Below are positions 8,484 to 40,690 of a stretch of DNA of 64,000 nt, one piece after another (position 1 is the first letter of the stretch; each line of letters begins with the position of its first letter). The DNA is taken from positions 62,001 through 126,000 of IMG/VR virus record IMGVR_UViG_3300035698_007246; one strand, written 5' to 3'. A program made the translations under genes and the position numbers. The notes under the pieces were generated by a model. The model ran no database searches and was not told where the DNA came from. It saw only the letters and a list, made by a program, of their open reading frames with translations.

Positions 8484-8525
8484 TTGACATCTCTTTGACC
8501 GTAACATATATTTAAAGCGTATTTA
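8484..8525 (+). promoter_or_regulatory. early promoter repeat
   Basis: TTGACA-17-TATATT. Confidence 0.75.
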
Positions 8526-9556: not shown

Positions 9557-9614
9557 TTGACATCTCTTCGGGCGTAACATATCTTTATTACGTATTAAAT
9601 TTTTCAAAGGAGGA
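9557..9614 (+). promoter_or_regulatory. early promoter repeat preceded by terminator hairpin (9512-9546)
   Basis: TTGACA-17-TATCTTTATTACGTATTAAA...AAAGGAGG. Confidence 0.8.
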
Positions 9615-14468: not shown

Positions 14469-14500
14469 TTGACATCTCTTTGGTCATAATATATCTTTTA
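14469..14500 (+). promoter_or_regulatory. early promoter repeat
   Basis: TTGACA-17-TATCTT. Confidence 0.8.
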
Positions 14501-17162: not shown

Positions 17163-17220
17163 TTGACATTCCTTTGGACATAACATATCTTTTTAGTACG
17201 TGTTAAATTTTTCAAAGGAG
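17163..17220 (+). promoter_or_regulatory. early promoter repeat preceded by terminator
   Basis: TTGACA-17-TATCTT. Confidence 0.75.
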
Positions 17221-21001: not shown

Positions 21002-21058
21002 TTGACATCTCTTGTGACATAATATATCTTTATTACGTATTAAATTTTTAAAGGAGAT
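21002..21058 (+). promoter_or_regulatory. early promoter repeat
   Basis: TTGACA-17-TATCTTTATTACGTATTAAA. Confidence 0.8.
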
Positions 21059-23290: not shown

Positions 23291-23607
23291 GGTATAAAAA
23301 AGTATTGACATTACTTTGCACATAACGTATCTTTTATATATCAAATTAATTAAAACAATTTTTTAAAGGAGTTAAAAATGATAAACGGAACAACAGAAAC
23401 AATAAAGTACACAGCAATTATTTCTAAATATACAACAGTTGAAACTTTTCAACCTCTTAAAAAGAATACTACTAAAGGTGGTAAACAATGGACAACAAGA
23501 GAGAGCAAAAAAAGAGCACCGAAAGGGAAGAGCTTGTAAAAGATTGTCGTTTAATATTGTCGTTGGTATGTAATTAATTTCTCACGTAAATATAAAGGAC
23601 ATTATAA

Positions 23608-26064: not shown

Positions 26065-26069
26065 ACTAT

Positions 26070-26215: not shown

Positions 26216-26240
26216 TGTGTTTTACATTTGATAGTTGAGT

Positions 26241-26498
26241 TTATGCAACTGCTGATGTAGAACCTGTTGCATTTTGCCAAGCAGTCCCATTCCAGAAAAT
26301 TGGAACACCATAATCTGTATCAAAATATTGTTCACCTGTTTGTGCTGTCGCTGATGTAGGTCTATCACCACTAACCCCATTAGCATACAACTTGTCAATG
26401 ATTTGTTTATCCACTGAATCTTTTGCAGTTGGATTTTGGAATTCATATAGTGAATCACCGCTTTTTACATAGAAACCTTTATAAAGTTCTGCACTCAT
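26241..26498 (-). CDS. small late/structural protein (fibre or decoration-type motif)
   Basis: DRPT...GEQYFDTDYGVPIFWNGTAW motif; AAGGAG RBS; TATAAATA upstream. Confidence 0.65.
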   Translation of the reverse strand: MSAELYKGFYVKSGDSLYEFQNPTAKDSVDKQIIDKLYANGVSGDRPTSATAQTGEQYFDTDYGVPIFWNGTAWQNATGSTSAVA

Positions 26499-26550
26499 AA
26501 TAGTTCTCCTTAAGAAATATTGTTATTATTAAATTTTGTTCAAGTAAAAA

Positions 26551-26565
26551 TATTTATACAAATTC
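26551..26565 (-). promoter_or_regulatory. T4-type late promoter GAATTTGTATAAATA
   Basis: TATAAATA core upstream of the gene starting at 26498; identical 15-mer at 58038-58052. Confidence 0.65.
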
Positions 26566-26569
26566 TAAC

Positions 26570-27316
26570 TTAATTTAGAGAATTTTTTAGGTCTAAATAG
26601 ATTGTCCCCACACGTTTATTAATCAGCTTTTTAGACTTTGAATCTAATCTTTCAAATACCGATTTTCCTTTGATGTCAATATTTTTTAAATTATTTATTA
26701 CTTCATTATAAAAAATATCAAAATTGTTATAGTGTTCAGGATTCTTTTTATATTTTGGTATAATAGTACTAAGAGCTTGTCGTGTCCATGAATTGATTTC
26801 TTCATGACCTCTTGTATACATATTTAAATCTTTTTCTTTATCATGGTCGTATGGCTGTTTAATGGAACTCTTTCCTTTTGATAATATGTTATTATAAAAA
26901 TGACTATATTCATGCACAAAAATATGTTGTTTATTTTTCAATTCATTTTGAAACTGGTTCAATATAGAAGGAAAATTTAAATTATCATTTTCAACATCAA
27001 AATTACTTTTTATTAAAATAAACTGACGACCATCTTTTGTTGATGTTCTTTTAGCTTTTCCCCGGATAATATCACCACTATCAGGAACAAACATCAAATT
27101 CAAATCAGTAACATGTTCATTATCAGGAAAAAGTTTTTGTAAATTTATTCCTTTTAATATTTTATCTTTTATTTTCATCTTGAAATTAAAAATATTATTC
27201 TTTTTTAATTTTATTTCGGTCATAAGTTTTTGAAATATATTATTAGCTATTTCAACTGTTTCAATATCTTTCTTTCTTTCTATAAAATAATGATTTATAA
27301 ATCTTGTATTTTTCAT
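26570..27316 (-). CDS. HExxH zincin-like protein, possibly packaged in the head
   Basis: IFVHEYSHF plus downstream EINS; N-terminus RFINHYFIE. Confidence 0.55.
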   Translation of the reverse strand: MKNTRFINHYFIERKKDIETVEIANNIFQKLMTEIKLKKNNIFNFKMKIKDKILKGINLQKLFPDNEHVTDLNLMFVPDSGDIIRGKAKRTSTKDGRQFILIKSNFDVENDNLNFPSILNQFQNELKNKQHIFVHEYSHFYNNILSKGKSSIKQPYDHDKEKDLNMYTRGHEEINSWTRQALSTIIPKYKKNPEHYNNFDIFYNEVINNLKNIDIKGKSVFERLDSKSKKLINKRVGTIYLDLKNSLN

Positions 27317-27431
27317 GAATGTTCTCCTTTTATATTTAAAGTATATAATTATTTATCTTTTTTGTATTTAAGGGTTGACATCTTTTGTGTTTTAACATAT
27401 CTTTATTACAGATTAAAATTTAAATAACTTT

Positions 27432-27908
27432 TTGAAGGGTGATATGATGGCAATAACAAGTACTGAAAGAAGGAAACAAAATAAAAATAAATGGAAAAGA
27501 ATTTATATTGATTATAAAAAATTATATGACCGTGATAAAAAATTAGCAATGGAATATTTAGATTCTGGAATTGACGATGTTAATAAATTTTTAGCTACTA
27601 AATATGTAAAAGTTTCGAATTCTAAATGTTCTCATAGTATTGACAATATAGTATATGAAACTAAACGTAAATGTATCTGTTTTAATGAAGATGAAATGGT
27701 TAGTTATTTTTTAGAAATGACAAATACAAAAAATGTAGATAATCATACACAAATTAAATCAAATATGATTCTTGAAATAGAAAGAAAAATAAAAATAGCT
27801 GAGGAAAAATTTAAATTTGAAAAGAATCATGTTGAATATACTAAGAAGCGTAAAGCACTTTGGTATCAAAAAAAACAATTAAAAAAATATAAAACATTGG
27901 GGTATTAA
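27432..27908 (+). CDS. basic hypothetical protein
   Basis: behind promoter repeat. Confidence 0.6.
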   Translation: MKGDMMAITSTERRKQNKNKWKRIYIDYKKLYDRDKKLAMEYLDSGIDDVNKFLATKYVKVSNSKCSHSIDNIVYETKRKCICFNEDEMVSYFLEMTNTKNVDNHTQIKSNMILEIERKIKIAEEKFKFEKNHVEYTKKRKALWYQKKQLKKYKTLGY

Positions 27909-28181
27909 ATGTCTATAAAAAGTACAAGATTTATATCATTAGAACATGCAATTGAAAGAATAACTCAGATTGCTTTGTTGATACAACAAAAGAAATACAG
28001 AGATATAGAGAATGAATCGTCTGAACATGACGGGGACGTACAACAGTTTGTGGAAGCAAATAGTTCTATTGATGTATCAAACATTGACAACTGGATAGAT
28101 ACAATGTTGGAAGATAAAATGGATGAACCATTTTTTAGACATTCAATCTTTGATAACTATTTAATTGGAAAGGGAGATTAA
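27909..28181 (+). CDS. hypothetical protein
   Basis: ORF in operon. Confidence 0.65.
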   Translation: MSIKSTRFISLEHAIERITQIALLIQQKKYRDIENESSEHDGDVQQFVEANSSIDVSNIDNWIDTMLEDKMDEPFFRHSIFDNYLIGKGD

Positions 28182-28530
28182 AATGGTAATGAATGTAACA
28201 AGCAATAAGTTTGAATATTATGATTCTTTTATATCAAAAGTTACAATATTACGTACTGTACTTTTAGATAAAGCATTTCATAAATATGGTCGCAAAGTGC
28301 ATGATGTATTAGAAATTGGTATAACTCCAATTGGTGACCACTGTTATAAAGAATTTATTATTTCTGTGGGAAATGGTAAAACAAAACATTTATTTGGTCA
28401 CTCCCTTAGTAATAGTGCCGAGTCATACATCACAGAAAAAATAAACGAACTTGAAAAAAAGCCAATCCGTATCTTTATGTATAACAATGACATAGTTGGT
28501 ATTGAATTAATTAATGAAGAAAAGTTTTGA
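28165..28530 (+). CDS. hypothetical protein
   Basis: ORF in operon. Confidence 0.6.
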   Translation: MEREIKMVMNVTSNKFEYYDSFISKVTILRTVLLDKAFHKYGRKVHDVLEIGITPIGDHCYKEFIISVGNGKTKHLFGHSLSNSAESYITEKINELEKKPIRIFMYNNDIVGIELINEEKF

Positions 28531-28721
28531 CATCTCTTTATCCATACGGTATATTTATTACAGATTAAAAATTTAAATAACTTTTTTTAAAGGATGATGA
28601 TATGTTACTTTTAAAACTTTTTTGTAAATTTGATAATTATAATTGTTATGTTTTGTTAGACCATTAATTAATATAATTAGTAGAGAGATAGATACATTAA
28701 TAAAAAACAAGAGGCAATAAA

Positions 28722-29282
28722 ATGAATGTTGTGAATGTAATAATAACGGATAATGAATTACATAATGTCCGGTCAAAACTCTTGACTGTTCAAGATAATG
28801 TGACAGAGGAAGCTATTGTTAAACGTGCCTATAATAGTTTTCATTACGAAGGGTATTCAGGATACATCGTATACACTGAAACCAATACCATTTGGGATGG
28901 CGTCGACTGGAAAGAGTATGATTATACTCTTGAGTATGCAGAGATACCACAGCAAGTTGTAATATGTTCTGAATGTCAACAACCTTTAAAGGATAGCATT
29001 AAAAATAGAAAGAATATAATGGACATTCAAAAGTTAATGGTAGAAGGTATGGAGATACATAAAAGGTTTGATGATATAGGAGACATATTGTATAATGAAT
29101 GTCTTAAACTTATTAAGCCTTTACTTGAAAAGAATCTATTCGAGAAAGCAAAGATACAAACAGGTAAGTTTTTTGCACCTGCTACTATTCCAACTATTGG
29201 ATGTATCTTTCCTATTAAAGTTTTAATATTTCATTATATAATCGTAATGGAAAAGAAAAACCTTGACACCGATTACCCATAA
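28722..29282 (+). CDS. hypothetical protein
   Basis: GAGG RBS. Confidence 0.6.
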   Translation: MNVVNVIITDNELHNVRSKLLTVQDNVTEEAIVKRAYNSFHYEGYSGYIVYTETNTIWDGVDWKEYDYTLEYAEIPQQVVICSECQQPLKDSIKNRKNIMDIQKLMVEGMEIHKRFDDIGDILYNECLKLIKPLLEKNLFEKAKIQTGKFFAPATIPTIGCIFPIKVLIFHYIIVMEKKNLDTDYP

Positions 29283-29326
29283 TGTATCTTTATTACGTAT
29301 TAAAAATTTAACAAGGAGATAATTAA

Positions 29327-29911
29327 ATGAAAACTTCAATTGAAGCAATCAATGCTATCATTATAAGTAAAATGGGTGCAATCACAGCATGGGAAAACTA
29401 TGTATTGAATAAAAATGCCCCTATTGAAATCACTATATTAAAAGGTGAGATAACATCATTAGAAACCGCCCGAAACATAATTGAAAAAAACAGTTATGAA
29501 AGTGAGCTATTTGAATTTGATACGGCATATTTAATAATGTCTTTGTCAATACAAGAAAAATCTACATTGTGTGAGTTATGTGGTGATGAAGTTATTGAAT
29601 GTGATAATTTTATTATTGGTAAATTATATGAAAAGGAATTGTTAGAAAATCACATTACCGGAAAACTAACAATCAAAGGTAGACAGATTGCAGAGTATCT
29701 GACGTTGTGGGTAGATATTCCTTTGACATACATAGAACGAAATATTCTTATTGATATGTATGATACTGGTAATGTACAAGAATCTTCTTATGATGCATTG
29801 GTATCGTTACAAAAAAGTAATTTACTTATTGATAATAAATTAACTACTAAGGGCAAAGAGTACGCAAAATGGATTGTATGGTCTTTATCTTCAATGAAAA
29901 GGAACAGATAA
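29327..29911 (+). CDS. protein with two winged-helix-like repeats
   Basis: KLTIKGRQIAEY and KLTTKGKEYAKW repeated ends. Confidence 0.55.
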   Translation: MKTSIEAINAIIISKMGAITAWENYVLNKNAPIEITILKGEITSLETARNIIEKNSYESELFEFDTAYLIMSLSIQEKSTLCELCGDEVIECDNFIIGKLYEKELLENHITGKLTIKGRQIAEYLTLWVDIPLTYIERNILIDMYDTGNVQESSYDALVSLQKSNLLIDNKLTTKGKEYAKWIVWSLSSMKRNR

Positions 29912-30072
29912 TTATATATGTGAATAAATTTCACTCTCTAAGTTAATGAATTCAAAAGATTTTTAAGAAACCAGAAATCTTTTTTGCATTTATGGGTTGA
30001 CTTTATTTTGGTATTAATATATATTTGTATTAATTAATTGTAATTAGATTTTTGATAATAGGGGTGTATATT

Positions 30073-31104
30073 ATGAATAAAATTAAAGCATATAAAGTAT
30101 TTAATCCAAATTGGACGTGTTTAAATTTTAAATATGAGGTTGGTAAAACCTATGAAATAAAGGAACCTGTGAACCTGTGTAAAATTGGATTTCATGCTTG
30201 CACAAAAATAAATAATTGTTTTAATTATTATAGTTTTAATACTAAAAATAAAGTTGCTGAAGTTGAATTGTTTGGTGATGTTTTAGGTATTGATGAAGAA
30301 AAACAATGTTCATCAAAAATAAAAATAATTAAAGAAATAACGTGGGAAAATATGTTAAAATTAGCTAATATCGGTGTTGGTAATTCAGGGCATAGTAACA
30401 GCGGAAATAGGAACAGCGGAGATATGAACGGCGGAGATATGAACAGCGGAAATAGGAACAGCGGAGATATGAACGGCGGAAATAGTAACAGCGGAAATAG
30501 GAACAGCGGACATTGGAACAGCGGAGATTGGAACGGCGGAAATTGTAACAGCGGAAATAAGAACAGCGGAAATTGGAACAGCGGACATTGGAACAGCGGA
30601 AATAGGAACAGCGGAAATTGTAACAGCGGAAATAGTAACAGCGGAAATAAGAACAGCGGAGATTGGAACAGCGGAAATAGGAACAGCGGATATTGGAACA
30701 GCGGAGATTGGAACGGCGGAAATTGTAACAGCGGAAATAAGAACAGCGGAGATTGGAACAGCGGAAATAGGAACAGCGGATATTTTAATAATATAATACC
30801 AAAAATAATAAATGTGTTTAATAATTCTTGTGATATTAATATCTGGGATAATATAGAAAAACCAAAGTTTATTTATAATATTATATTGGAAGAGTGGGTT
30901 TATTTTAATAATATGTCCGTTGAAGAAAAAAAACTTTATCCTAAAGCATATATACGAGATGGATATTTAAAAACACACTCATATAAAGACGCGTGGAATA
31001 CTGCTTATAAAAATGCTACAACTGATGATATAATATTATTAAAGCAATTGCCTAATTTTGATGTTCGTGTGTTTGAAGATATAACTGGAATACGAATTAA
31101 ATAA
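30073..31104 (+). CDS. pentapeptide-repeat protein (NSGxx repeats) with N-terminal GFHAC domain
   Basis: YEVGKTYE...LCKIGFHAC then NSGNR/NSGDW repeats. Confidence 0.85.
   Translation: MNKIKAYKVFNPNWTCLNFKYEVGKTYEIKEPVNLCKIGFHACTKINNCFNYYSFNTKNKVAEVELFGDVLGIDEEKQCSSKIKIIKEITWENMLKLANIGVGNSGHSNSGNRNSGDMNGGDMNSGNRNSGDMNGGNSNSGNRNSGHWNSGDWNGGNCNSGNKNSGNWNSGHWNSGNRNSGNCNSGNSNSGNKNSGDWNSGNRNSGYWNSGDWNGGNCNSGNKNSGDWNSGNRNSGYFNNIIPKIINVFNNSCDINIWDNIEKPKFIYNIILEEWVYFNNMSVEEKKLYPKAYIRDGYLKTHSYKDAWNTAYKNATTDDIILLKQLPNFDVRVFEDITGIRIK
30382..30786 (+). repeat. 15-bp coding tandem repeat (AACAGCGGA core)
   Basis: read directly. Confidence 0.95.
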
Positions 31105-31232
31105 TTTTACTCTATAAAGTTTTAATTTTAAAAGATTTTTGGGAAACCATAAATCTTTTTTGCATTTATGGGTTGACATCTCCCCTACCTTAAAGTATCT
31201 TTTATACACACAATTTAACAACGGTGTGAAAA

Positions 31233-31760
31233 ATGATTAATAAAAAAGATTACCAGAAAAAACAATTAACAACTAATAGTAAGAAACCTTGTTATAGGTA
31301 TGATTACTTTGGTAAAGGTGTAACTGTTGTTATTATTTTTGAAGAGAATCAAGGCAAAAGGGCTTATGATATTCAAATCAGTTATGAGGGTGAGACCTAT
31401 AAATATTATTATACTTCTCTTAAAGTTGATAAGCTTATGGTTATAGGTTATGTTACTGAAGGTGTAGAACAATTTATTGTACGTTCTCGTTCACCTTTTA
31501 AGACTGTTAATAATATCATTGAATCAATAGTAAAGACTATGGATTATAAAAAGTGTTACCTGAAAGCAATTAAAAAAACTCAAACGTTATTAAATAATAA
31601 TAACACTATAATAGAAATTTCTAAAGAAATTGAAAGCGATTTTGAATTACTTTCTCAAAAGTTAATGCTTGTTAAGTCTGGTGTAATGTCTACAGTTGAT
31701 TTAATTATATTCCTTGATAATGAAATAGAAAAAACAAACTATCCATATAAGGTAGGATAA
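31233..31760 (+). CDS. hypothetical protein
   Basis: behind promoter repeat. Confidence 0.65.
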   Translation: MINKKDYQKKQLTTNSKKPCYRYDYFGKGVTVVIIFEENQGKRAYDIQISYEGETYKYYYTSLKVDKLMVIGYVTEGVEQFIVRSRSPFKTVNNIIESIVKTMDYKKCYLKAIKKTQTLLNNNNTIIEISKEIESDFELLSQKLMLVKSGVMSTVDLIIFLDNEIEKTNYPYKVG

Positions 31761-32028
31761 TATGTTAAGTGTCCATGCATATTATAATGGCAGAGGGTTT
31801 TCTTTTGAATATGATAATACTCTCTATGAATTTGTTTGTACTGGCTCAGCAACAAATTTTTTAAACAATAAAGGATATACCTCCACTTCCTATATCATTG
31901 AGAATACTAATGTTGTGGGTGTAAGATTTTTTTGTGGAAATAAAATGTAAAAATAACTATTGACTTTGGTTTGTTCCTAAAGTATCTTTTATACGTACTT
32001 AAAAATTAAATAACTTTTTCAAGGGGAT

Positions 32029-32685
32029 ATGATGAGTAGATATTCATACGAATTAAAAACAACGGGAATAACAGCAGAACAAAAAAATGTGGTGGATTCA
32101 TTTATTAACAACATGAAAAAACACCCACAATATAGTGAGCAATCAAACATGGTTGATTATTTGAGTAGTCGAATGAGAGAATTGTGTATTGACCCACATT
32201 CTGAAGGTGTTCCGTTATGGGATAGTAATGCAACTTTACAATTAACTAATTCTTCTGTTGGTTCTTATTGTCCAGATATGTATAAATATTTTAAATTCAT
32301 TTTTGATAATGTCAAACAAAATAAAACACATACAGACGATGGAATATATAAAAATTATTCTGTTCGTAAACAAGGGGATTCTTTATATTTTCGTATCTTT
32401 CAGAATCAATCAGGTAAACATTTTATTGTTCGATATACTAAAAATTGTTTACGAGAAGAGTTTGAGATTGCCAGAGGTAACAGAATAAATGTATTTCGTT
32501 ACTGTGATTGCAGAGACGATAATTTTATTTTTGGTTTTAACTATGAATTTGACAACAATAAAGAGTTTCAATTTGAAGATGATATCTTAATGAACCATAA
32601 TACATTTAAAGATTTGAGATATTTCTGTATACAATTAGTAAATATCTATGACGACCTCAAAGAACAGATAAAAGAAAATGCATAA
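32029..32685 (+). CDS. hypothetical protein
   Basis: behind promoter repeat. Confidence 0.65.
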   Translation: MMSRYSYELKTTGITAEQKNVVDSFINNMKKHPQYSEQSNMVDYLSSRMRELCIDPHSEGVPLWDSNATLQLTNSSVGSYCPDMYKYFKFIFDNVKQNKTHTDDGIYKNYSVRKQGDSLYFRIFQNQSGKHFIVRYTKNCLREEFEIARGNRINVFRYCDCRDDNFIFGFNYEFDNNKEFQFEDDILMNHNTFKDLRYFCIQLVNIYDDLKEQIKENA

Positions 32686-32838
32686 AAAATTATTTAGGTA
32701 TCTTCCTATAAAATATATAGTTACCATATATAAATATTATTCACTATTAAATAATTAATCTTTTCTCTTGACATCTCTTTGCATATAAAGTATCTTTTAT
32801 ACGTACTTAAAATTAATAACTTTTAAAGGAGTGGTGGA

Positions 32839-33204
32839 ATGAACAGACAAGAAAAATTTCAAAACCAAGTAACTAAGTTTGTAACTAAGCATAGAAATAC
32901 AATCAAATCAGATAACCATTATGATTACTGTATTGAAACTATTTACGGTAAACTCTTTATATCTTTACATAGTTTAGATTGTGAAATACCTCTTTCAAAA
33001 TTGTATAGTGTATTCTGTCGTTTTGAATTTCCTGAACTGGTTACCAATAAAAATATAAGAAATCAAATGAATCTTAATTCTGGTAAATGGAATTTTCATA
33101 ACTCTGATAGAAAGATAATGTATAATACTTTCAAAGGCTGGATAGCTTTTATATGTCTTAAGAATCAACCATTAATAACAAAATGGGAAAACATGGTAAA
33201 GTAA
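32839..33204 (+). CDS. hypothetical phage protein
   Basis: IETIYGKL...VFCRFE...NSGKWNFH. Confidence 0.65.
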   Translation: MNRQEKFQNQVTKFVTKHRNTIKSDNHYDYCIETIYGKLFISLHSLDCEIPLSKLYSVFCRFEFPELVTNKNIRNQMNLNSGKWNFHNSDRKIMYNTFKGWIAFICLKNQPLITKWENMVK

Positions 33205-33641
33205 TGAATGCAAAGTATTATTACTATTCAATCAAAACTTCAAAGGGTAAATTCAACGTGTGTGTGATGGAAAGAAATACATACACATTGAATCAATTCA
33301 ATCAAAAATTAATATCACTTAATGAATTGTGTGACCATGATAAATATATAGTCACAACAGAACAAAAACAATTCAATGAATCTATACAATATAATAAAGA
33401 CTTTGGTTTGTTTTCTATTGGTGGAATTAAACTAATATTTAAATATACTGCACTCCCAGTGTTAAAAGTTTTGTTCGCTGTTTTAAAGTACTTCTATGCA
33501 ATCACAGCACAAAGTTTTATAGATGTCTGTTCCTGGCTTAAAGGTATCTTGATTAAAATATTTTCATTCCTGTTTAAAATTGCAATCGTTGCAGGGATTA
33601 TATTTATTATTTATTACATCGTAACTCATTATTATATATAA
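33183..33641 (+). CDS. membrane protein
   Basis: C-terminal hydrophobic segments. Confidence 0.55.
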   Translation: MGKHGKVMNAKYYYYSIKTSKGKFNVCVMERNTYTLNQFNQKLISLNELCDHDKYIVTTEQKQFNESIQYNKDFGLFSIGGIKLIFKYTALPVLKVLFAVLKYFYAITAQSFIDVCSWLKGILIKIFSFLFKIAIVAGIIFIIYYIVTHYYI

Positions 33642-33750
33642 AGATGTACTCCCCTATCAAAAATAATAAAAGAAATACCTTGACTTTGTTTTGTTCCTAA
33701 AGTATCTTTTATACGTACTAAACAATTGAACTTAAACAAAAGGAAACACG

Positions 33751-33993
33751 ATGAAAAAATTAAATTATAATCCAAATAATCCAGATGATTACAATAGATT
33801 AATAAACGATTTTTATATAATGGTTACTGAAGAGAATGAAACTATTATGAATAATATAATGAAAGATTGTATTAAACAAAATAACGATGTTACAAAAACA
33901 ATGAAAAGGGGACTTGATTTAATTAAACAACGATGCATTGACACTGATAATATTCACATGTGGATACGTTTCAATAAAAAAGCATTTAATTAA
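33751..33993 (+). CDS. hypothetical protein
   Basis: behind promoter repeat. Confidence 0.6.
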   Translation: MKKLNYNPNNPDDYNRLINDFYIMVTEENETIMNNIMKDCIKQNNDVTKTMKRGLDLIKQRCIDTDNIHMWIRFNKKAFN

Positions 33994-34075
33994 TCTTTTC
34001 TCTTGACTTTGTTTTGTTCCTAAAGTATCTTTTATACGTACTTAAAATTAATAACTTTTTTAAAGGAGTGATGAA

Positions 34076-34555
34076 ATGGGTTTAAAATATTTAATAAGTA
34101 TCATTAATAAATGTGAGCTGGTAAATGAATACACTTATCAAACAGAAATTAAAAACGCTAACAATTTTTGTTTAACATTACATAACAAGAAATCTAAAAT
34201 TGATTTATTTATTATGTTCAAACACGAACATAATTTAATTAATATTTATATTAAGAATGGACATGTTGCAATAATTCTGAACAATGACAATTTAAATCTA
34301 TTAAAATTACATCTAATCGAAAAATTTAAAATTCCATTTCCTGTTGAATTTTGTTTGTGGTTCTCAAGTTGTTGTATGAATTCGACCAAACATTATAAAT
34401 ATGGAAACCACCAATTAACAAACATACAATACAGGAAATCAACACAAGATTATAAAAACAAACTTAATAAAAATATTATCACTTCTTTTAAATCTTCTGA
34501 AGATGATTTTAAATCTTTAATTAAAAAACTTGATTCTTTTAAAAAAGGAATGTAA
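34076..34555 (+). CDS. hypothetical protein
   Basis: behind promoter repeat. Confidence 0.6.
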   Translation: MGLKYLISIINKCELVNEYTYQTEIKNANNFCLTLHNKKSKIDLFIMFKHEHNLINIYIKNGHVAIILNNDNLNLLKLHLIEKFKIPFPVEFCLWFSSCCMNSTKHYKYGNHQLTNIQYRKSTQDYKNKLNKNIITSFKSSEDDFKSLIKKLDSFKKGM

Positions 34556-34806
34556 TAAAATGTTAAATAACGATACATTAAAAACTAATCCTACAATTAT
34601 GACTATCATTATTAATATTCAAACGATGTCAAAAATGAAAGGTAACGAAAAAACTTTTGATGAATTGGAAAATAAAACATATCAAGAGCTTAGTATAATT
34701 CAAGATTCTTTAATTAGAAAATTAAAATAAATACCTTGACTTTGTTTTATTCCTAAAGTATCTTTTATACGTACAAAACAATTGAACTTAAACAAAAGGA
34801 AACACT

Positions 34807-35139
34807 ATGAAAGAATTAAATTATATGATGCTTGGTAGATTACAATCTGATTGTGAATGTTTAAAATATTTATGGGCTAATGATGAACAAGAACAAATCA
34901 ATGGAAACATGACGAACGGAACAAATTATATGATGCTTAGTAGATTACAATCTGATTGTGAATATTATCTCAATGCTGGTGGTAGATGTTTAAAATATTT
35001 ATGGGCTAATGATGAACAAGAACAAATCAATGAAATGAAAAAACAGTATAATTTGATACCAACAGATAAAAAACCGGAATGGTTGACATATAAACAAATA
35101 GAAGAGTATGAAAAACTCATGGTTAAAAAGGATAATTAA
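34807..35139 (+). CDS. LPD11-like domain protein with partial N-terminal duplication
   Basis: YMMLSRLQSDCEYYL...LWA...QI...KPEWLT...YEK. Confidence 0.7.
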   Translation: MKELNYMMLGRLQSDCECLKYLWANDEQEQINGNMTNGTNYMMLSRLQSDCEYYLNAGGRCLKYLWANDEQEQINEMKKQYNLIPTDKKPEWLTYKQIEEYEKLMVKKDN

Positions 35140-35142
35140 AAA

Positions 35143-35514
35143 ATGACTTACAATCTTAAAAAAATATTATACAACAGAACAACAAACAAGATTCAACAAC
35201 AAAAGGTTTTAATTATGAATGAATGTAAAGATATAATAAAAATTAATGCATCAAATTTAACAATGGAAGAGATATCTTTCACCAACACAACAAACAAGTT
35301 TTGTAAATTTCATATATCATTTAATACTAAAACTAATATGGTTCATGCTCTAAGAAATATAATGGTTTCTGACTCTGGTTTCTATTCAATGATTAAAAGT
35401 AAGAAGATTGATTTATATACCTATGATGAATTAATAAAAGAAATTAAAAAGTATCACAAAATAAAAAAGATTAATATTAAACCTGTATATTGTAATTTTT
35501 CTTTTCACAATTAG
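35143..35514 (+). CDS. hypothetical protein
   Basis: ORF in operon. Confidence 0.55.
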   Translation: MTYNLKKILYNRTTNKIQQQKVLIMNECKDIIKINASNLTMEEISFTNTTNKFCKFHISFNTKTNMVHALRNIMVSDSGFYSMIKSKKIDLYTYDELIKEIKKYHKIKKINIKPVYCNFSFHN

Positions 35515-35757
35515 AGGAGCAACAACAAAATGAAAGATATAATTTATATAAGCAACGACCGAAAATTATACACATTACTTTTAAGACTATTCAAAAAAAT
35601 ACAAATATCTTTAAAATTATTTCACATCATAACCACCTGTCATTCATATAGTTACAACAAACTATAAAAATAAATTAAAAAGTACTTGCTTTTAAAATTG
35701 TATTAAAGTATCTTTTATACATCGAAAGAAACAAAACAATTTAAAACAAAAGGAAAC

Positions 35758-36435
35758 ATGATGAAAGATACTAAAAAGATAACAGATAAAAACACAAAAA
35801 AAGGAACAATCAAAATTGCTGGTCTTGAATTAACATTAGGTAATTCAAAACTTCCAATAACTACAGCAATTCTCAATATGGGAACTGCACACAATTGCCC
35901 CTCTGATAAATGTGGTCTTTGTCCTTTTGGTATCAATGGCAAAGGGAGATTAAAAAACAAATGTTATGCATTAAAATCTGAATACATGTATGTAAATACA
36001 AAATTAATGAGAGAACGTCAAGAAAAATATTGGTTAGAAACTCCAACAAAAACAATCGTTGATCATTTCAATTATGCTTTCCAAACTGGCAAAAAAGGAA
36101 AAGAAATAAACGCCGTAAGATTTAATGAATCCGGTGATTTTCATTCAAAGGAATGTCTTACAAAACTTAAGAAGATTGCAAAGGCATTCCCAAACATAGA
36201 ATTTTATACATATACTCATAGAAGTGATATAATGAAAAGTGTAACAGTAAACAGTTTACCTACAAACTTGAATATTAATCTTTCTTATGTTAATAATAAA
36301 AAAGGTTTCAATACTTTCTGTCTTGATACTCAATTCAAACCAGAAACAAAAACATTAACTTGCACCAAATGTTTTAAAGGCTGCACCCTCTGCCATAAAG
36401 CTAAAGGTTTAAACATTGCTGTAAAAATTCACTAA
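35758..36435 (+). CDS. Gp88-like Cys-rich phage protein
   Basis: GNSKL, CPS..CxxC..CYA, VRFNESGDF, FYTYT, C-terminal CxxC. Confidence 0.7.
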   Translation: MMKDTKKITDKNTKKGTIKIAGLELTLGNSKLPITTAILNMGTAHNCPSDKCGLCPFGINGKGRLKNKCYALKSEYMYVNTKLMRERQEKYWLETPTKTIVDHFNYAFQTGKKGKEINAVRFNESGDFHSKECLTKLKKIAKAFPNIEFYTYTHRSDIMKSVTVNSLPTNLNINLSYVNNKKGFNTFCLDTQFKPETKTLTCTKCFKGCTLCHKAKGLNIAVKIH

Positions 36436-36567
36436 GATAATTCAAGGGGAGCAATCCTCTAATTAAATTAAATTAAATTAAACCTTGACACTAATTATAC
36501 ATTAATATATCTTTATTACAGACAATGAAATTAAATTAAATTAAATTAAAACATAAAGGATGTAAAA

Positions 36568-36846
36568 ATGAATAAGTATCAAAATTTAGTTACACAACAC
36601 AATACAATATCAAAAAATATTATTTCTTCGTTAAAATTAGAAATAAATGAAAGTAACATTAAATCAAAATACATAAATTGTAATGCACTTCCCGTTAATG
36701 TATTTGATTATGATGAATTAGTTGTTGTGAATGATGAACTCACGTTTTTAGATGAATATGGAAATCATTATTCATTATATGCTAAATGTATTAATAATGA
36801 TTTAATTGAAATTTTATATAATATTGCAGACTTGAAAATAAATTAA
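36568..36846 (+). CDS. hypothetical protein
   Basis: behind promoter repeat. Confidence 0.6.
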   Translation: MNKYQNLVTQHNTISKNIISSLKLEINESNIKSKYINCNALPVNVFDYDELVVVNDELTFLDEYGNHYSLYAKCINNDLIEILYNIADLKIN

Positions 36847-36901
36847 ACCTTGACACCAATTATATCTTTATTACAGACAATGAAACAAAGGATAAAACAA
36901 A

Positions 36902-37132
36902 ATGAAACAATCTTTTAAAGACCTTGCTCAAAGAAGAGAGAACGCCCGTGAACGTTTTATTGATGTGATGATAGAACAATATCAGTTCACCAAAGAACAA
37001 GCACAACAGATACTTAAAACGTATCTTAAATTAAAGCTGGTTAAACTCTCTCCCAATGATGGACAATTCAATATTAAACATGGTGCATATATGGATAAAG
37101 CTGTACTTAAACGTGCATTGATTGTTGGATAG
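36902..37132 (+). CDS. hypothetical protein
   Basis: AAGGA RBS. Confidence 0.65.
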   Translation: MKQSFKDLAQRRENARERFIDVMIEQYQFTKEQAQQILKTYLKLKLVKLSPNDGQFNIKHGAYMDKAVLKRALIVG

Positions 37133-37529
37133 ATAAGAAACTATCTGATAAAATAAATAATGACGTTATAGAATTAACTCCCCAGAAAGGGCTTTAAAAT
37201 GATTGGTATACTCTTTGCTGTCTGGTTCTCCATCGCTATTATTCTTATGGGAATGATTAACCAAATCTCTATTATAGTGCTGTCTAACAAATCACCAGAG
37301 GAAAAAATAAAACTATTACAACTATTCTGTTCTAAAAATATAATCAATACCATGATTAAATACTATAAATTTAATAAAGCACTCAAAACTATATCCAAAA
37401 TAGTTAAGAAGGACAAACAAAATGAAACACTACTGTAAAATAATTAATCTTTTCTCTTGACACTAATTATACATTAATATATCTTTATTACAGATTAAAA
37501 TTTGAAATAACTTTAACAAAGGATTAAAA

Positions 37530-37799
37530 ATGAATAATTTAATTAGGTATCAAGTAAAAATTAAAAATACTGAAATTATAAAAATTGTATCTTTTTCAAA
37601 AACACAAAAAAGAAATGATGTTATTAAAAAATTTACTACATTATTAAATTTAGATACAACAGGCAGTAATAACGAATACATTATTAAACAAATTAATTGT
37701 AAAACTTGTACAGAATTTAATAGTTATATACACACTTGTGGTTTAGATAATACAATGACTAAATCACTTGATTCTTGTATTGAATGGAAAAAAAGATAA
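37530..37799 (+). CDS. hypothetical Cys-containing protein
   Basis: CKTC...C...C; behind promoter repeat. Confidence 0.55.
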   Translation: MNNLIRYQVKIKNTEIIKIVSFSKTQKRNDVIKKFTTLLNLDTTGSNNEYIIKQINCKTCTEFNSYIHTCGLDNTMTKSLDSCIEWKKR

Positions 37800-38039
37800 A
37801 GATAAAAATGTTTAAATTTAAACTAAGGAGTAAAACAAAATGATAAAATTATGTGTCGGTTCAATCGCTTTCCTTATCTATGCTGTTAGTATCTTACTTG
37901 ATAAAGACCTAAAACAAAAAGGAAAGATGTATTTTAAACAGTTTTGGAATGTTAAAAAACCAATAGGCATTATTGGAGTAGTCTCATTTGTGATATTTAC
38001 TATTACCAAAGCGTTCACCCAACACAAAAGGAAACTATA

Positions 38040-38460
38040 ATATTTCTATATATGTTCAATAAATGTACAAACTATGTACATAAAATGTACTTAAGACATT
38101 ACCAAAACCTATCTTATCTATTGGTAATGTCTTACAAGATATCATGTAAAAAATACCACATAATAGGGGTAACTCCCTGTGTGTGGTGTATACAATAAAT
38201 GTACATTACATAAAGGGTGGATACTGCTGGTGATGTCGCTCTGTTTAGATAATCTGCAAAGACATCACCGCAATTTTAACAGCCCAGAATGATTATATTA
38301 CGATATTCGAAATCTTTCTCGACGACGTTTGTATATTATGATTATTTTATATATTGAAATTACGTTATTCGTAATATATTTACAAATACCATTCTCATGA
38401 TGTCAATAAACTATTGGTATGATATTCTCCATAGCAATTCTTATACCAATAAAAATAAAA
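38040..38460. other. non-coding region rich in inverted repeats
   Basis: 14-bp IR 38092-38134; IRs 38155-38189, 38229-38269, 38413-38451; phased ATGTAC repeats. Confidence 0.7.
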
Positions 38461-38771
38461 TAAAACAAGAAATGTCTTGACATCATTTTGTTATTAAAGT
38501 ATCTTTAATACATAGAAATAAATTAAACATAAACAAAGGAAAAAACAAATGTTCAAAACAATAACAACAATTTTAATAATCATTTCCCTTTCATGTATTG
38601 CTATAATGGACGACAATGATAAAAAAGAAATGATGTCAAGTATTGATTCATTCAGAAATAATACTCATGAAACTATTTTAAATAAATTAAAATAACTATT
38701 GACATCATTTAAACATTAAAGTATCTTTAATACATAGAAATAAATTAAACATAAACAAAGGATAATATACT

Positions 38772-39029
38772 ATGAAAACGATTATATGTTCTACTACAAC
38801 ACAAAAAAAGAAATATGATCACAATGTTACAGCAAAAGTATATCGTATTAAAAATAACGTTCCCATTTTAATTGGACTGTGTGAATGGAATACCGGAAGT
38901 TGTAAAGGAACACTAAACGAAGTCTTTTCCTTTTTATTTGAACAAAAATTAATATCTAAAAAAGAATATAACAAATATAATCAATATTATATTCATGGAG
39001 AAAATAATATTAATATTATTGAAGTATAA
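38772..39029 (+). CDS. hypothetical protein
   Basis: behind promoter repeat. Confidence 0.6.
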   Translation: MKTIICSTTTQKKKYDHNVTAKVYRIKNNVPILIGLCEWNTGSCKGTLNEVFSFLFEQKLISKKEYNKYNQYYIHGENNINIIEV

Positions 39030-39039
39030 TAATTTACAA

Positions 39040-39164
39040 ATTTGACATCCTTATTTTATACAGTTGATAAAAATTATAAGGATGTCAAATCAATAAGTTA
39101 CAAAAAATGTCTTTAAGAGTCGTGTATAAAATAATATATGAAATGGTTATATTATTTTATACAC
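39040..39164. repeat. two perfect inverted repeats (15 bp and 17 bp) plus IHF-consensus box
   Basis: ATTTGACATCCTTAT/ATAAGGATGTCAAAT; GTGTATAAAATAATATA/TATATTATTTTATACAC; AATCAATAAGTTA at 39088-39100. Confidence 0.8.
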
Positions 39165-39257
39165 TAAAAATAAAATAAGAAATGTCTTGACATCATTTAA
39201 ATTATAATATATCTTTAATACGTAATAAAAAATAACAAATTTTTCAAAGGATTTAAA

Positions 39258-39833
39258 ATGACTACTTCAAAATTATACTTCAAATCAGACGAACAATTAT
39301 TAAATGCTGTTACTGTTGCTACACTTGGTAAAGGTCAATCATTCGCAAGTCTTACAGCAACGACATCACCAAAATGTACAAAGAAGCACAGAGTATCAAA
39401 AGATTTGTTCGACACAATATTTACTGGTGCTGTATACAAAACAACTGTTACAACGTGCAACATAAATGTAAAATATGAAAATGCTGTTAACAATCAATTA
39501 AAGCGGGAAGGTATGAATCAATTGACATTTGCTGGTGAGACTTTGCCTTATGGTGAGTGGGTTGATGGTCTTGAAAATATAGTAATTGTTCACAATGAGT
39601 CATATCAGTTACGTTACTTTGTGGGTATGAATGACAATAAGCCAAGTGTGGTATATCACTATGCAAACGGTGTTGAGCTAACTGAGTGGGAACGTGAACA
39701 GCTCAATGGGTTCCTTCCTAAAAAATATGCTGCTAAGAACCAAGGCACTGATAAGGAAATCAAACCTCGTAATGTAAAGTTTGCTGGTGTAGTTGAATTG
39801 AAATTAAATGGACAGCACTTAGTACGTAAATAA
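39258..39833 (+). CDS. hypothetical phage protein
   Basis: YENAVNNQLKREG...LPYGEW; promoter at 39187. Confidence 0.75.
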   Translation: MTTSKLYFKSDEQLLNAVTVATLGKGQSFASLTATTSPKCTKKHRVSKDLFDTIFTGAVYKTTVTTCNINVKYENAVNNQLKREGMNQLTFAGETLPYGEWVDGLENIVIVHNESYQLRYFVGMNDNKPSVVYHYANGVELTEWEREQLNGFLPKKYAAKNQGTDKEIKPRNVKFAGVVELKLNGQHLVRK

Positions 39834-40524: not shown

Positions 40525-40690
40525 GGGGGACCCCCGGGGGCGGAATCAATGCCCGACCCTGTGTTTTGACATCCATGAGAATCAAAGAGAATCAAAGAGA
40601 ATCACTCCCAAAATAAAAATTTTTACAATATATTTCGACATCACTGAGAATCATTTACAGAATAAAAATTTTTACAATTTTTTTGGAAAT
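40525..40690. repeat. GGGGGACCCCCGGGGG motif, GAGAATCAAA tandem repeats and AATAAAAATTTTTACAAT x2 at the strand switch
   Basis: read directly. Confidence 0.75.

What the first reader, a model, noticed from the sequence alone, without database searches (positions are those of the whole stretch)
27375..39260. Promoter-bounded gene-cassette array with a non-canonical -10 (TATCTT) and conserved downstream TAC
Seen: 27 plus-strand copies of TTGACW-N16/17-TATMTT across 0.1-39.2 kb, 17 of them in 27.4-39.2 kb, mostly TATCTTTWWTAC, each feeding 1-3 small unrelated genes. Known: similar to T4-type PeSL elements and the SPO1 host-takeover module, where promoter repeats drive gene shuffling. Inference: a hyperplastic early region enriched for anti-defence or takeover genes. 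TATCTT may reflect the host sigma specificity and help identify the host.
Basis: partly seen in the sequence, partly recalled or inferred. Interest (0 to 1): 0.6.

Follow-up and report, generated by a model that had tools for sequence, protein, structure and literature searches.

The report
Repeated promoters framing phage gene cassettes
A 13-kb stretch of a large, uncultured T4-like phage holds 17 copies of one strong promoter, each driving one to four small genes of unknown function, and related phages keep the promoter but carry different genes between the copies, a known way for such phages to swap accessory genes.

Summary
TTGACW-N16/17-TATMTT occurs 29 times in the window against 0.4 expected. 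Fifteen exact and two degenerate copies lie in 27.4-39.2 kb, each 35-70 nt upstream of a ribosome site and 1-4 small plus-strand ORFs.

The genome is a 224-kb, 31% GC phage distantly related to T4. It has two discrete promoter types. One is TATATT (34 copies, both strands). The other is TATCTT (21 copies, all plus strand), which co-varies with a purine at -13, T at -6 and TAC at -3..-1.

A metagenome scan found related phages with proteins 47-83% identical. They keep the TATCTT-TATTAC signature over unrelated spacers, but hold different, missing, extra or reordered genes between the copies. Copies within this genome are mosaics of shared upstream, spacer and leader modules.

My best reading is an array of early promoters read by the host's main sigma factor, working like T4-type PeSL elements: each cassette is expressed on its own, and the repeats serve as recombination sites.

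It is not a strict PeSL, because most copies lack the stem-loop. The idea that TATCTT reveals the host sigma is not supported. Enrichment for anti-defence genes is untested. Breakpoints at promoters are more frequent than elsewhere, but not significantly so.

The parts
27375..27403 (+). Class-B promoter (TTGACA-N17-TATCTT, then TATTAC). First of the array, divergent from the minus-strand gene 26570-27316. Drives ORFs 27444-27908, 27909-28181 and 28183-28530.
28527..28555 (+). Hybrid promoter: TATATT hexamer with the class-B TATTAC discriminator. Leader of about 165 nt, then ORF 28722-29282 (186 aa). The ortholog in relative L225 has TATCTT.
29263..29290 (+). Class-B promoter with a 16-nt spacer. 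Its -35 lies in the 3' end of ORF 28722-29282. Drives ORF 29327-29911 (194 aa). The whole cassette is absent from relative L225.
29927..30001 (+). Left copy of a 75-nt direct repeat (hairpin, T-run, start of -35) flanking the pentapeptide cassette.
   Evidence: family D9, 84% identity
29997..30025 (+). Promoter with a TATATT hexamer and no TAC, sharing the upstream terminator module with 31173. Drives the DUF7666/pentapeptide-repeat gene 30073-31104. The cassette is absent from relative L225.
31103..31177 (+). Right copy of the 75-nt terminator-promoter repeat. The same module precedes the orthologous promoter in L225.
31173..31201 (+). Class-B promoter (TTATAC discriminator) with an upstream hairpin. 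Drives ORFs 31233-31760 and 31762-31950, both with homologs in L225.
31960..31988 (+). Class-B promoter. Drives ORF 32032-32685 (217 aa), which has no homolog in 5.8 billion protein clusters.
32768..32796 (+). Class-B promoter with the upstream module TAATTAATCTTTTCTC. Drives ORFs 32839-33204 and 33183-33641.
   Evidence: D3
33680..33708 (+). Class-B promoter. Together with its leader it is a 108-nt repeat, 94% identical to the copy at 34736. Drives ORF 33751-33993.
   Evidence: D2
34003..34031 (+). Class-B promoter and mosaic. Its upstream module and leader match 32768 and its spacer matches 33680. Drives ORFs 34076-34555 and 34560-34730.
   Evidence: D3
34736..34764 (+). Class-B promoter. 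Drives the LPD11 gene 34807-35139, ORF 35143-35514 and possibly 35530-35667.
35686..35714 (+). Class-B copy whose -35 is TTGCTT; the orthologs in two relatives have TTGACT. Drives the GP88-family gene 35761-36435.
36485..36513 (+). Class-B promoter flanked by AAATT runs. Shares its spacer with 37457. Drives ORF 36568-36846.
   Evidence: D4
36850..36868 (+). Decayed class-B copy. TTGACA lies only 7 nt from TATCTT, a 10-bp spacer deletion relative to 36485. It sits upstream of ORFs 36902-37132 and 37199-37438.
   Evidence: D8
37457..37485 (+). Class-B promoter and mosaic. Its upstream module matches 32768 and 34003, its spacer matches 36485 and its leader matches 27375. Drives ORFs 37530-37799, 37840-38040, 38052-38198 and 38179-38292.
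   Evidence: D3, D4
38477..38505 (+). Class-B promoter (TAATAC discriminator). Drives the 48-aa ORF 38549-38695.
38699..38727 (+). Class-B promoter (TAATAC). Drives the 85-aa ORF 38772-39029 (phrog_18334), which is absent from relatives R1 and R2a.
39187..39215 (+). Last class-B promoter. Drives ORF 39258-39833 (191 aa, 65-71% identical in relatives) and small ORFs up to 40616. The orthologs in R1 and R2a read TATATT.
9557..9585 (+). Class-B promoter outside the array, directly after a strong hairpin terminator. Conserved in relative L209.
14469..14497 (+). Class-B promoter before the YfaP-like 684-aa gene 14541-16595.
17163..17191 (+). Class-B promoter directly after a hairpin terminator.
21002..21030 (+). 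Class-B promoter, conserved in place in relative L212.
23305..23333 (+). Class-B promoter after the terminator at 23251-23282. Relative L212 carries three extra promoter-bounded cassettes (2.5 kb) at this site.
8484..8512 (+). Promoter with a TATATT hexamer and a class-B-like spacer. This cassette is absent from relative L209.

Best explanation
The repeats are strong promoters of the type read by a bacterial primary sigma factor (sigma-70 or sigma-A). The host RNA polymerase most likely uses them early in infection by a 224-kb phage distantly related to T4.

Anatomy of one unit:
- an A-rich tract upstream of the -35;
- TTGACA, then a 17-bp spacer ending in TAA-N-R;
- TATCTT as the -10;
- a fixed discriminator T-W-W-T-A-C, which would place the start at the purine 7 nt after the hexamer;
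- an AU-rich leader of 30-50 nt with a strong ribosome site;
- one to four small genes.
A minority of units begin with an intrinsic terminator.

Each cassette carries its own promoter and ribosome site, so any gene placed behind a copy is expressed whatever its neighbours are. The copies share 50-110 bp of near-identical sequence. That gives the phage's own recombination enzymes (UvsX, gp46/47 and gp32 homologs) sites for deleting, duplicating and exchanging cassettes within the genome and with co-infecting relatives.

Shown here: the motif, its two classes, the layout, the mosaic copies, and the conservation of the promoter over changing gene content in relatives.

Inferred: use by the host sigma, early timing, the start site, and recombination as the cause of the rearrangements.
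For: Motif and layout:
- The motif is about 70-fold over chance and co-oriented with the ORFs.
- TTGACA, the 17-nt spacing and T-12/A-11/T-7 are kept in all copies.

Two discrete classes:
- C at -9 goes with T at -6 in 20 of 21 copies, against 7 of 34 for the other class (p = 3e-8).
- It goes with TAC at -3..-1 in 15 of 21, against 1 of 34 (p = 6e-8).
- It goes with a purine at -13 in 21 of 21.

Signature in relatives:
- Related lineages were found with the class-B pattern.
- Of 21 promoters on their contigs, 17 have C at -9, 19 have TAC and 20 have T at -6, while the spacers differ.
- Orthologous promoter pairs are 96% identical in the -10 and 63% in the spacer.
- TATCTT is also kept after the sigma gene of a relative 66% identical in that protein.

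Mosaic copies inside this genome:
- One 16-nt upstream module is joined to three different spacers.
- Two spacers are each joined to different upstream modules and leaders.

Cassette-level differences from relatives:
- L225 lacks two whole cassettes. One of them is flanked in this genome by a 75-nt terminator-promoter direct repeat.
- L212 has three extra cassettes between two promoter copies where this genome has one promoter.
- R1 and R2a differ by exactly one unit of promoter plus a 49-aa ORF, with flanks 89-93% identical.
- L214 and L210 show a changed gene order.

Genome:
- Recombination genes and a T4-type core are present.
Against: - There are no transcript data.
- In a hand tally, promoter-bearing junctions are broken in 7 of 9 cases and promoter-less junctions in 8 of 17. 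The one-sided Fisher p is 0.14, so promoters are not shown to be preferred breakpoints.
- Three metagenomes hold this phage at 100% identity over 4-20 kb of the array, so no rearrangement is seen on short time scales.
- Only 2-3 of the 17 array copies have an upstream hairpin.
- The phage encodes its own sigma-70-family factor next to a class-B promoter. This leaves open which holoenzyme reads class B.
Confidence: 0.6

Rival explanations
1. Class-B promoters (TATCTT, T at -6, TAC) are read by RNA polymerase carrying the phage's own 214-aa sigma-70-family factor rather than the host's main sigma. On this view the cassette array is a delayed-early or middle regulon switched on by the phage.
For: - A sigma factor with regions 2 and 4 is encoded at genome 60,723-61,367. 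It scores 48.8 bits on TIGR02937 (cut-off 42.9) and matches phrog_351.
- It is preceded by a class-A promoter. A class-B promoter overlaps its 3' end, and that layout is kept in a relative whose sigma is 66% identical.
- The two promoter classes are discrete and differ at -13, -9, -6 and -3..-1.
- Class B lies only on the + strand, mostly downstream of the sigma gene.
- No other motif was found for this sigma to read.
Against: - Both classes share the same TTGACA at 17 nt, the mark of primary sigmas.
- In the only alignment of its region 4 (to RpoS, weak at 1.9 bits), the positions that contact the -35 in sigma-70 (R584, E585, R588, Q589; own knowledge, Campbell et al. 2002) read K, Q, F, G.
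- Orthologous promoters swap TATCTT and TATATT.
- Classes A and B are interleaved between genome 61 and 92 kb, and one class-B copy lies 27 kb upstream of the sigma gene.
Confidence: 0.15
2. The copies are promoters, but their likeness comes only from selection for one strong promoter design. The gene turnover then comes from illegitimate recombination anywhere in intergenic DNA, and the repeats play no special part.
For: - 8 of 17 promoter-less junctions are also broken between relatives, and the enrichment at promoters is not significant.
- A 2.8-kb indel in the replication block between this genome and G002 has no promoter motif at its ends.
- No rearranged variants of this phage are seen in three samples.
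Against: - Copies share sequence with no known promoter role. Examples are identical 17-nt spacers and 16-nt upstream modules in shuffled combinations, and leaders up to 108 nt long at 94% identity.
- A cassette missing from a relative is flanked by a 75-nt direct repeat.
- There is a clean one-cassette indel between R1 and R2a.
- Discriminator subtypes cluster by position along the array, as local copying or gene conversion would give.
Confidence: 0.15
3. The block conserved from about -17 to +1 is also the binding site of a DNA-binding regulator, phage or host, that shuts the cassette promoters off together after the early phase.
For: - Conservation reaches beyond what sigma contacts need: TAA at -17..-15 and TWWTAC at -6..-1. 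It holds across lineages whose spacers differ.
- Some copies hold the palindrome TACGTA at the predicted start.
Against: - The palindrome is not conserved. TACAGA, TACATA and TACACA are as common.
- No candidate regulator was identified.
- A pyrimidine at -1 with a purine at +1 is the ordinary start-site preference of bacterial RNA polymerase (own knowledge).
Confidence: 0.07
4. The repeats are not promoters but some other repeated element, such as recombination sites of a dedicated recombinase or replication or packaging signals.
For: No transcript evidence was available.
Against: - They match the two-hexamer promoter architecture perfectly at fixed spacing. They are always co-oriented with the next ORF at leader distance and are followed by strong ribosome sites.
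- The other promoter class, of the same design, keeps its position before core genes in relatives with 53-70% identical DNA polymerase.
- None of the array proteins scanned matched a recombinase family.
- No Rfam family matches the region.
Confidence: 0.03

Closest known systems
PeSL elements (promoter-early stem-loop) of T4-type phages RB49/phi1, T4/PST and KVP40/nt-1 (PMC2839356, PMC4122927)
   Same: - Repeated, near-consensus sigma-70-type early promoters with an AT-rich upstream tract.
- Concentrated in a hyperplastic region of a T4-superfamily genome.
- Flank ORFans that differ between related phages.
- Each phage lineage has its own promoter consensus (TTGACA..TATAAT, TTTACW..TAYWAT, TTGYVH..TAWWAT in PMC4122927).
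- Some copies here are terminator-promoter composites, and one pair flanks a cassette that a relative lacks.
   Different: - Only about a quarter of the copies in the window, and 2-3 of 17 in the array, have the stem-loop.
- The conserved part extends downstream instead, into the discriminator TWWTAC and shared leader modules.
- The phage is very distant from those studied (DNA polymerase about 30% identical) and shows strong Shine-Dalgarno sites.
- Mini-circles and terminator function were not tested.
- Promoter junctions are not significantly more often broken than other junctions.
Host-takeover module of Bacillus phage SPO1 (Stewart et al. 1998, as cited in PMC6873191)
   Same: A 12-13 kb cluster of about 26-31 small genes in many short operons, each with a strong primary-sigma promoter and a strong ribosome site. 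SPO1, like this phage, also encodes its own sigma factors for later classes.
   Different: - No sequence relation: the array ORFs hit no SPO1-containing PHROG family.
- The array is internal, at genome 89-102 kb of 224 kb, and not in a terminal redundancy.
- The phage has a T4-type core, not a herellevirus core.
- Host shut-off activity is untested.
T4 early promoters and the hyperplastic regions of T4-like genomes
   Same: - Dense early promoters in front of small non-essential genes.
- Conservation that extends beyond the two hexamers.
- A late class marked by a TATAAATA-type motif with a gp55-like sigma.
   Different: - The -35 is a perfect TTGACA rather than the T4 variant.
- There is a second, discrete promoter class.
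- A full-length extra sigma factor is present. MotA and AsiA were not searched for.
Integron gene-cassette arrays
   Same: A one-directional array of short, unrelated, mostly unknown genes separated by a repeated element. Cassettes are gained and lost as units.
   Different: - Here the repeat is a promoter at the 5' end of each cassette, not an attC recombination site at the 3' end.
- Each cassette has its own promoter instead of one shared Pc.
- No integrase-like hit appeared among the array proteins scanned.
- Exchange would rest on general homologous recombination.

Membership tests
PeSL (T4-type promoter-early stem-loop cassette element) | Repeated strong sigma-70-like early promoter with an AT-rich upstream tract | tested here: met
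   29 matches against 0.4 expected. The logo shows an A-rich tract at -36..-50, TTGACA, a 17-nt spacer and TATMTT.
PeSL (T4-type promoter-early stem-loop cassette element) | Adjacent stem-loop that can act as a terminator, as a constant part of the element | tested here: not met
   A hairpin plus T-run upstream was found for 29997 and 31173 in the array, and for 9557, 17163 and 23305 (14469 weak) outside it. 14-15 of the 17 array copies have none.
PeSL (T4-type promoter-early stem-loop cassette element) | Preferential location in a hyperplastic region, next to ORFans | tested here: met
   1.43 copies per kb in 27.4-39.3 kb against 0.37 per kb in the rest of the + block in the window. The array proteins scanned have no hit above Pfam's cut-off and no PHROG hit at E 0.001, except LPD11/phrog_15551, GP88/phrog_1392, DUF7666+pentapeptide/phrog_14105 and phrog_18334.
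PeSL (T4-type promoter-early stem-loop cassette element) | Indels and replacements between related phages end at the elements | tested here: inconclusive
   There are clear cases in L225, L212, R1 against R2a, and R1. However, 8 of 17 promoter-less junctions are broken too, and the one-sided Fisher p is 0.14.
PeSL (T4-type promoter-early stem-loop cassette element) | Recombination between copies yields mini-circles found in infected cells and virions | not testable with these tools
PeSL (T4-type promoter-early stem-loop cassette element) | Host genome is a T4-superfamily phage | tested here: met
   gp43-type polymerase about 30% identical to those of cyanophages and T4-likes. Sheath, large terminase, UvsX, gp46/47, gp41, gp61, gp32 and gp55-like proteins by PHROGs.
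Primary-sigma (sigma-70 / sigma-A) promoter | -35 TTGACA, 17 +/- 1 bp spacer, -10 TAnnnT | tested here: met
   All copies meet it. Spacing is 17 nt in 20 of 21 class-B and 30 of 35 class-A copies.
Primary-sigma (sigma-70 / sigma-A) promoter | Transcripts start 6-8 nt after the -10 and depend on the host holoenzyme | not testable with these tools
   No RNA data were available. The host is unknown: the RfbA-like gene is 51-57% identical to genes of many phyla.
SPO1-type host-takeover module | Cluster of small early genes in short operons with strong promoters and ribosome sites | tested here: met
   27-31 ORFs behind 17 promoters in 13.2 kb, with AAAGGAG-type ribosome sites.
SPO1-type host-takeover module | Homology to SPO1 gp37-gp60, or a location in the terminal redundancy | tested here: not met
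   No PHROG family with a known function was hit. The array is internal, at genome 89.4-102.6 kb of a 223.9-kb record without end repeats.
SPO1-type host-takeover module | Products shut off host processes | not testable with these tools
   Needs expression assays. The one fold attempted came out at low confidence (pLDDT 41).
Integron cassette array | Integrase gene and attC sites | tested here: not met
   No recombinase-like family was hit among the array proteins scanned. The repeat is a 5' promoter without a conserved inverted-repeat structure.

The most novel reading that the evidence does not exclude
The TATCTT/TWWTAC promoters form a regulon read by the phage's own full-length sigma-70-family factor. 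That would make this a T4-like phage that runs a whole array of exchangeable accessory cassettes from a private promoter code which keeps the host-type -35. A variant of the same idea is that the -17..+1 block is the operator of a phage regulator that switches all cassettes together.
Probability: 0.17. Interest if true: 0.6.

Novelty: new variant of a known kind. Interest (0 to 1): 0.4.

Why it matters
- It extends the PeSL idea, in which repeated early promoters act as portable expression signals and as recombination sites for accessory genes. The extension is to a very distant, uncultured branch of the T4 superfamily, where the stem-loop is dispensable and the conserved part is the -10, discriminator and leader.
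- The array and its relatives offer a set of some 40 small, early, mostly unknown genes that turn over between lineages. These are natural candidates to screen for host takeover and counter-defence functions.
- The promoter signature worked as a probe. One DNA pattern pulled related phages out of 241 million metagenome records when protein searches with array and neighbouring genes had found none.
- Two discrete promoter classes together with an extra phage sigma pose a clear, testable question about how transcription is programmed in this lineage.

Tried and rejected
- Megablast of the array against GenBank phages found no match.
- Homologs of the pentapeptide protein in IMG/VR lie in unrelated contigs without the motif.
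- A looser class-B pattern in IMG/VR gave 81 single hits, and the six contigs checked were not kin.
- Relatives found through the DNA polymerase (G001-G004, 53-70% identity) do not cover the array, so they could not test it.
- Protein-based locus searches with the ORFs 32029-32685 and 39258-39833, Tpt1 and the sigma factor found nothing in IMG/VR.
- Exact-protein look-up found only 100% identical copies of this phage. An apparent deletion in L202 was just a contig end.
- The Atlas search and an AlphaFold model of two ORFans gave nothing usable (pLDDT 0.40 and 41).
- No third promoter motif for the extra sigma emerged from k-mer enrichment.
- No T7-type RNA polymerase match was found, but the control genomes were silent as well.
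- Host inference from the RfbA-like gene failed: 51-57% identity to many phyla.
- I rejected reading TTGCTT at 35686 as a MotA box, because the orthologs read TTGACT.
- I rejected the TACGTA palindrome as an operator, because it is not conserved.
- A literature search found no prior report of a TATCTT promoter class in phages.

Full report
**Observation.** The pattern TTGACW-N16/17-TATMTT occurs 29 times in the 64-kb window against 0.40 expected from shuffles. Twenty-four copies are on the + strand, 23 of them between 8.4 and 39.2 kb. In 27,375-39,260 there are 15 exact copies. Searching for TATCTTTWWTAC alone adds two degenerate ones. One has TTGCTT as its -35 (35,686). The other has lost 10 bp of spacer (36,850). 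All copies face the same way as the ORFs and lie 35-70 nt before a strong ribosome site and a start codon; the copy at 28,527 has a leader of about 165 nt. The 27-31 ORFs behind them (37-343 aa) show no mutual similarity.

**The genome.** The window is bases 62,001-126,000 of a single 223,879-bp virus record with 31% GC. It encodes:
- a gp43-type DNA polymerase about 30% identical to those of cyanophages and T4-like coliphages;
- a tail sheath, large terminase and ribonucleotide reductase;
- homologs of UvsX, gp46/47, gp41, gp61 and gp32, and a gp55-like late sigma.

The T4-type late motif TATAAATA is enriched in the structural and replication blocks. Genes run on the + strand for 0-102.6 kb, on the - strand to about 185 kb, then on the + strand again. 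The array is the last 13 kb of the first block. It has lower GC (24-29%) and, over about 32-40 kb, almost no GC skew, unlike the rest of that block. The phage is uncultured. The same sequence, 100% identical, is in three metagenome assemblies. No source gives it a name, and nothing near it is in GenBank phages.

**Two promoter classes.** Genome-wide, TTGAC-N-N16/17-TATNTT has A (34 copies) or C (21) at the fourth -10 position, and almost nothing else. The TATATT class is on both strands across the genome, for example before replication genes and a tRNA cluster. The TATCTT class is only on the + strand, between genome 33.5 and 101.2 kb. C at -9 co-varies with three other features:
- T at -6: 20 of 21 against 7 of 34, p = 3e-8;
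- TAC at -3..-1: 15 of 21 against 1 of 34, p = 6e-8;
- a purine at -13: 21 of 21, where the other class mostly has T.

With the usual 7-nt distance, the start would be the purine right after TAC: G in 10 copies, A in 9 and C in 2. Pairs of class-B copies with unlike spacers still share 62% of the discriminator, against 33% in class A.

**Not host sigma specificity.** T-12, A-11 and T-7, which carry most of the -10 recognition (own knowledge), are intact in TATCTT. The same genome uses TATATT 34 times. Orthologous promoters in relatives also swap the two. This genome's 28,527 is TATATT where L225 has TATCTT, and its 39,187 is TATCTT where R1 and R2a have TATATT, while TATTAC stays. So TATCTT does not point to an unusual host sigma and does not help to name the host. 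The host remains unknown: an RfbA-like gene is 51-57% identical to genes of many phyla. The perfect -35 and the strong AAAGGAG ribosome sites only suggest a host whose genes use such signals, and that is inference.

**Mosaic copies inside the genome.** The copies are built from interchangeable modules.
- The 16-nt upstream module TAATTAATCTTTTCTC precedes three copies (32,768, 34,003, 37,457) that have three different spacers.
- One 17-nt spacer is shared almost unchanged by four copies (31,960, 33,680, 34,003, 34,736; identical in 33,680 and 34,003, one or two changes in the other two), which have three upstream modules and two leader types.
- Another spacer is shared by 36,485 and 37,457, which differ on both sides.
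- Repeat lengths reach 108 nt at 94% identity, 73 nt at 89% and 81 nt at 77%.
- The discriminator subtypes TATTAC, TTATAC and TAATAC are clustered along the array.

These combinations are what crossovers or gene conversion within the conserved -35 and -10 cores would produce.

**Relatives.** Protein-based searches with array and neighbouring genes found no kin. The polymerase-based relatives do not cover this region. A scan of the metagenome collection with a strict class-B pattern returned 20 loci. Five were this phage, ten came from two other samples (Ga0180431 and Ga0180432), and five were unrelated single hits. The ten are 67-87% identical in DNA where alignable, with proteins 47-83% identical, and represent at least two lineages. 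Of 21 promoters on their contigs, 17 have C at -9, 19 have TAC, 20 have T at -6 and 19 have a purine at +1, over unrelated spacers. In orthologous pairs, identity is 96% in the -10, 89% in the -35, 77% at -6..+1, 63% in the spacer and 53% in the leader. A further relative, whose sigma protein is 66% identical, keeps TTGACA-N17-TATCTT right after that gene. The signature is therefore maintained by selection and is not just recent copying.

**Gene content between the promoters differs**.
- L225 goes from the homolog of 28,722-29,282 straight to the terminator-promoter of the 31,233 cassette. It lacks the 194-aa and pentapeptide cassettes. In this genome the pentapeptide cassette is flanked by a 75-nt direct repeat of that terminator-promoter module, at 84% identity.
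- L212 has three extra promoter-bounded cassettes (2.5 kb) where this genome has the single promoter 23,305. Its left copy shares this genome's upstream terminator, and its right copy shares the downstream gene.
- R1 lacks the five genes at 36,568-38,040 and has two other small genes instead.
- R1 and R2a, both seen in sample Ga0180431, differ by exactly one unit of promoter plus a 49-aa ORF, with flanks 89-93% identical.
- L214 places homologs of 37,199 and 33,183 side by side before the GP88 gene. L210 pairs the 36,902 homolog with new neighbours.

**Limits of the recombination claim.** In a hand tally of junctions covered by these contigs, promoter-bearing junctions are broken in 7 of 9 cases and promoter-less ones in 8 of 17. 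The odds ratio is 3.9 and the one-sided p is 0.14. Genes are also inserted and lost inside operons. A 2.8-kb indel in the replication block has no promoter at its ends. Promoter copies are thus demonstrable exchange points, but they are not shown to be the main ones. No rearranged variant of this very phage was seen in three samples.

**Which polymerase.** Just upstream of the window, the phage encodes a 214-aa sigma-70-family factor with regions 2 and 4. It lies between a class-A promoter and a class-B promoter. This raises the rival view that class B is read with the phage sigma. Four points count against it:
- both classes share TTGACA at 17 nt;
- in the one available alignment, which is weak, the recognition helix of region 4 differs at the -35-contacting positions (which residues make contact is own knowledge);
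- the A/C swaps at orthologous promoters;
- the interleaving of the two classes.

I put this rival at about 0.15. No separate motif for this sigma was found.

**Comparison with what is known.** The closest described system is the PeSL of T4-type phages. PeSLs are repeated early promoters joined to stem-loop terminators. They are concentrated in hyperplastic regions, flank ORFans, have a lineage-specific promoter consensus, and recombine to give indels and mini-circles (PMC2839356, PMC4122927). This array works like that but is not a strict member. The stem-loop is present in only 2-3 of the 17 array copies. The conserved part extends downstream instead. Circles could not be tested.

The SPO1 host-takeover module (26 small early genes in 12.4 kb with strong promoters and ribosome sites; PMC6873191) is alike in layout only. 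Integron arrays are a looser analogy.

**Gene functions.** Gene functions in the array remain open. Only four ORFs have significant family hits (E below 0.001):
- LPD11/phrog_15551 (34,807-35,139);
- GP88/phrog_1392 (35,761-36,435);
- a DUF7666 plus pentapeptide-repeat protein, phrog_14105 (30,073-31,104);
- phrog_18334 (38,772-39,029).

Nothing shows anti-defence activity.

**Verdict.** This is a real and well-delimited feature, and its transcriptional role is very likely. Single-genome mosaics and comparison across lineages support its role in cassette turnover, but enrichment at promoters is not statistically established. It is a new variant of a known kind of element.

Noticed in passing
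genome 60,723-61,367, just upstream of the window (L203:1375-2019): An extra sigma-70-family factor of 214 aa with regions 2 and 4, in addition to the gp55-like late sigma at genome 182,487-182,846. A class-A promoter precedes it and a class-B promoter overlaps its 3' end. A 66%-identical homolog on L205 has the same downstream promoter. Its target promoters are unknown.
   Followed up: partly
genome 143,262, 159,139 and 184,680 (minus strand); G001-G004 loci L171-L186: A sub-class of TATATT promoters with a 16-nt spacer that holds a T-run/A-run palindrome (TTGACTTTTTTATAAAA..TATTATATT). It keeps both sequence and position before replication and recombination genes in relatives with 53-70% identical polymerase. 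It may be a separately regulated class.
   Followed up: partly
window 11,803-11,893: A 20-nt unit repeated 4.6 times in tandem directly after promoter 11,783. Each unit carries a ribosome-site-like AAGGA and an ATG.
   Followed up: no
window 30,052-31,104 (+) and 41,143-41,715 (-): A DUF7666 plus pentapeptide-repeat gene (15-nt period, 26 copies) has a shorter paralog on the opposite strand (15-nt period, 16 copies). Pentapeptide-repeat proteins are known DNA mimics, so this is a candidate takeover or counter-defence function.
   Followed up: partly
window 40,692-61,616, minus strand: A cluster of nucleic-acid repair and reversal genes: NADAR (40,692-41,150), RNA 2'-phosphotransferase Tpt1 (41,893-42,834), RtcB ligase (52,401-53,612) and a phrog_850 RNA-binding protein (60,159-61,616). 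They are plausible counter-measures to host nucleases or ADP-ribosylation.
   Followed up: no
window 25,983-27,316: A small island of minus-strand ORFs (248 aa, 85 aa and 57 aa, with no family hit for the 248-aa ORF, the only one scanned) sits inside the otherwise one-directional + block. A two-way hairpin terminator lies at 26,186-26,214, and GC is very low (25%).
   Followed up: no
window 40,591-40,688: A 49-nt tandem duplication (80% identity) exactly where the + and - transcription blocks converge.
   Followed up: no
window 24,076-44,555 (L200), 29,969-37,374 (L201), 30,756-34,774 (L202): The same phage is present at 100% nucleotide identity in three separate metagenome assemblies (JGI 3300031227, JGI 3300005935, ENA ERZ27315525).
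   Followed up: yes
L209:1447-2185 against genome 59,999-60,696: A relative carries, between its RfbA-like and next gene, a 0.75-kb segment 70% identical to DNA that in this genome lies 6 kb away, just before the sigma gene and ending at the class-A promoter 60,667. This looks like a translocated piece.
   Followed up: partly
window 14,541-16,595: A 684-aa YfaP-like protein (phrog_1735), 45-49% identical to proteins of many large phages of Vibrio, Serratia, Salmonella and Klebsiella, is driven here by a class-B promoter.
   Followed up: no
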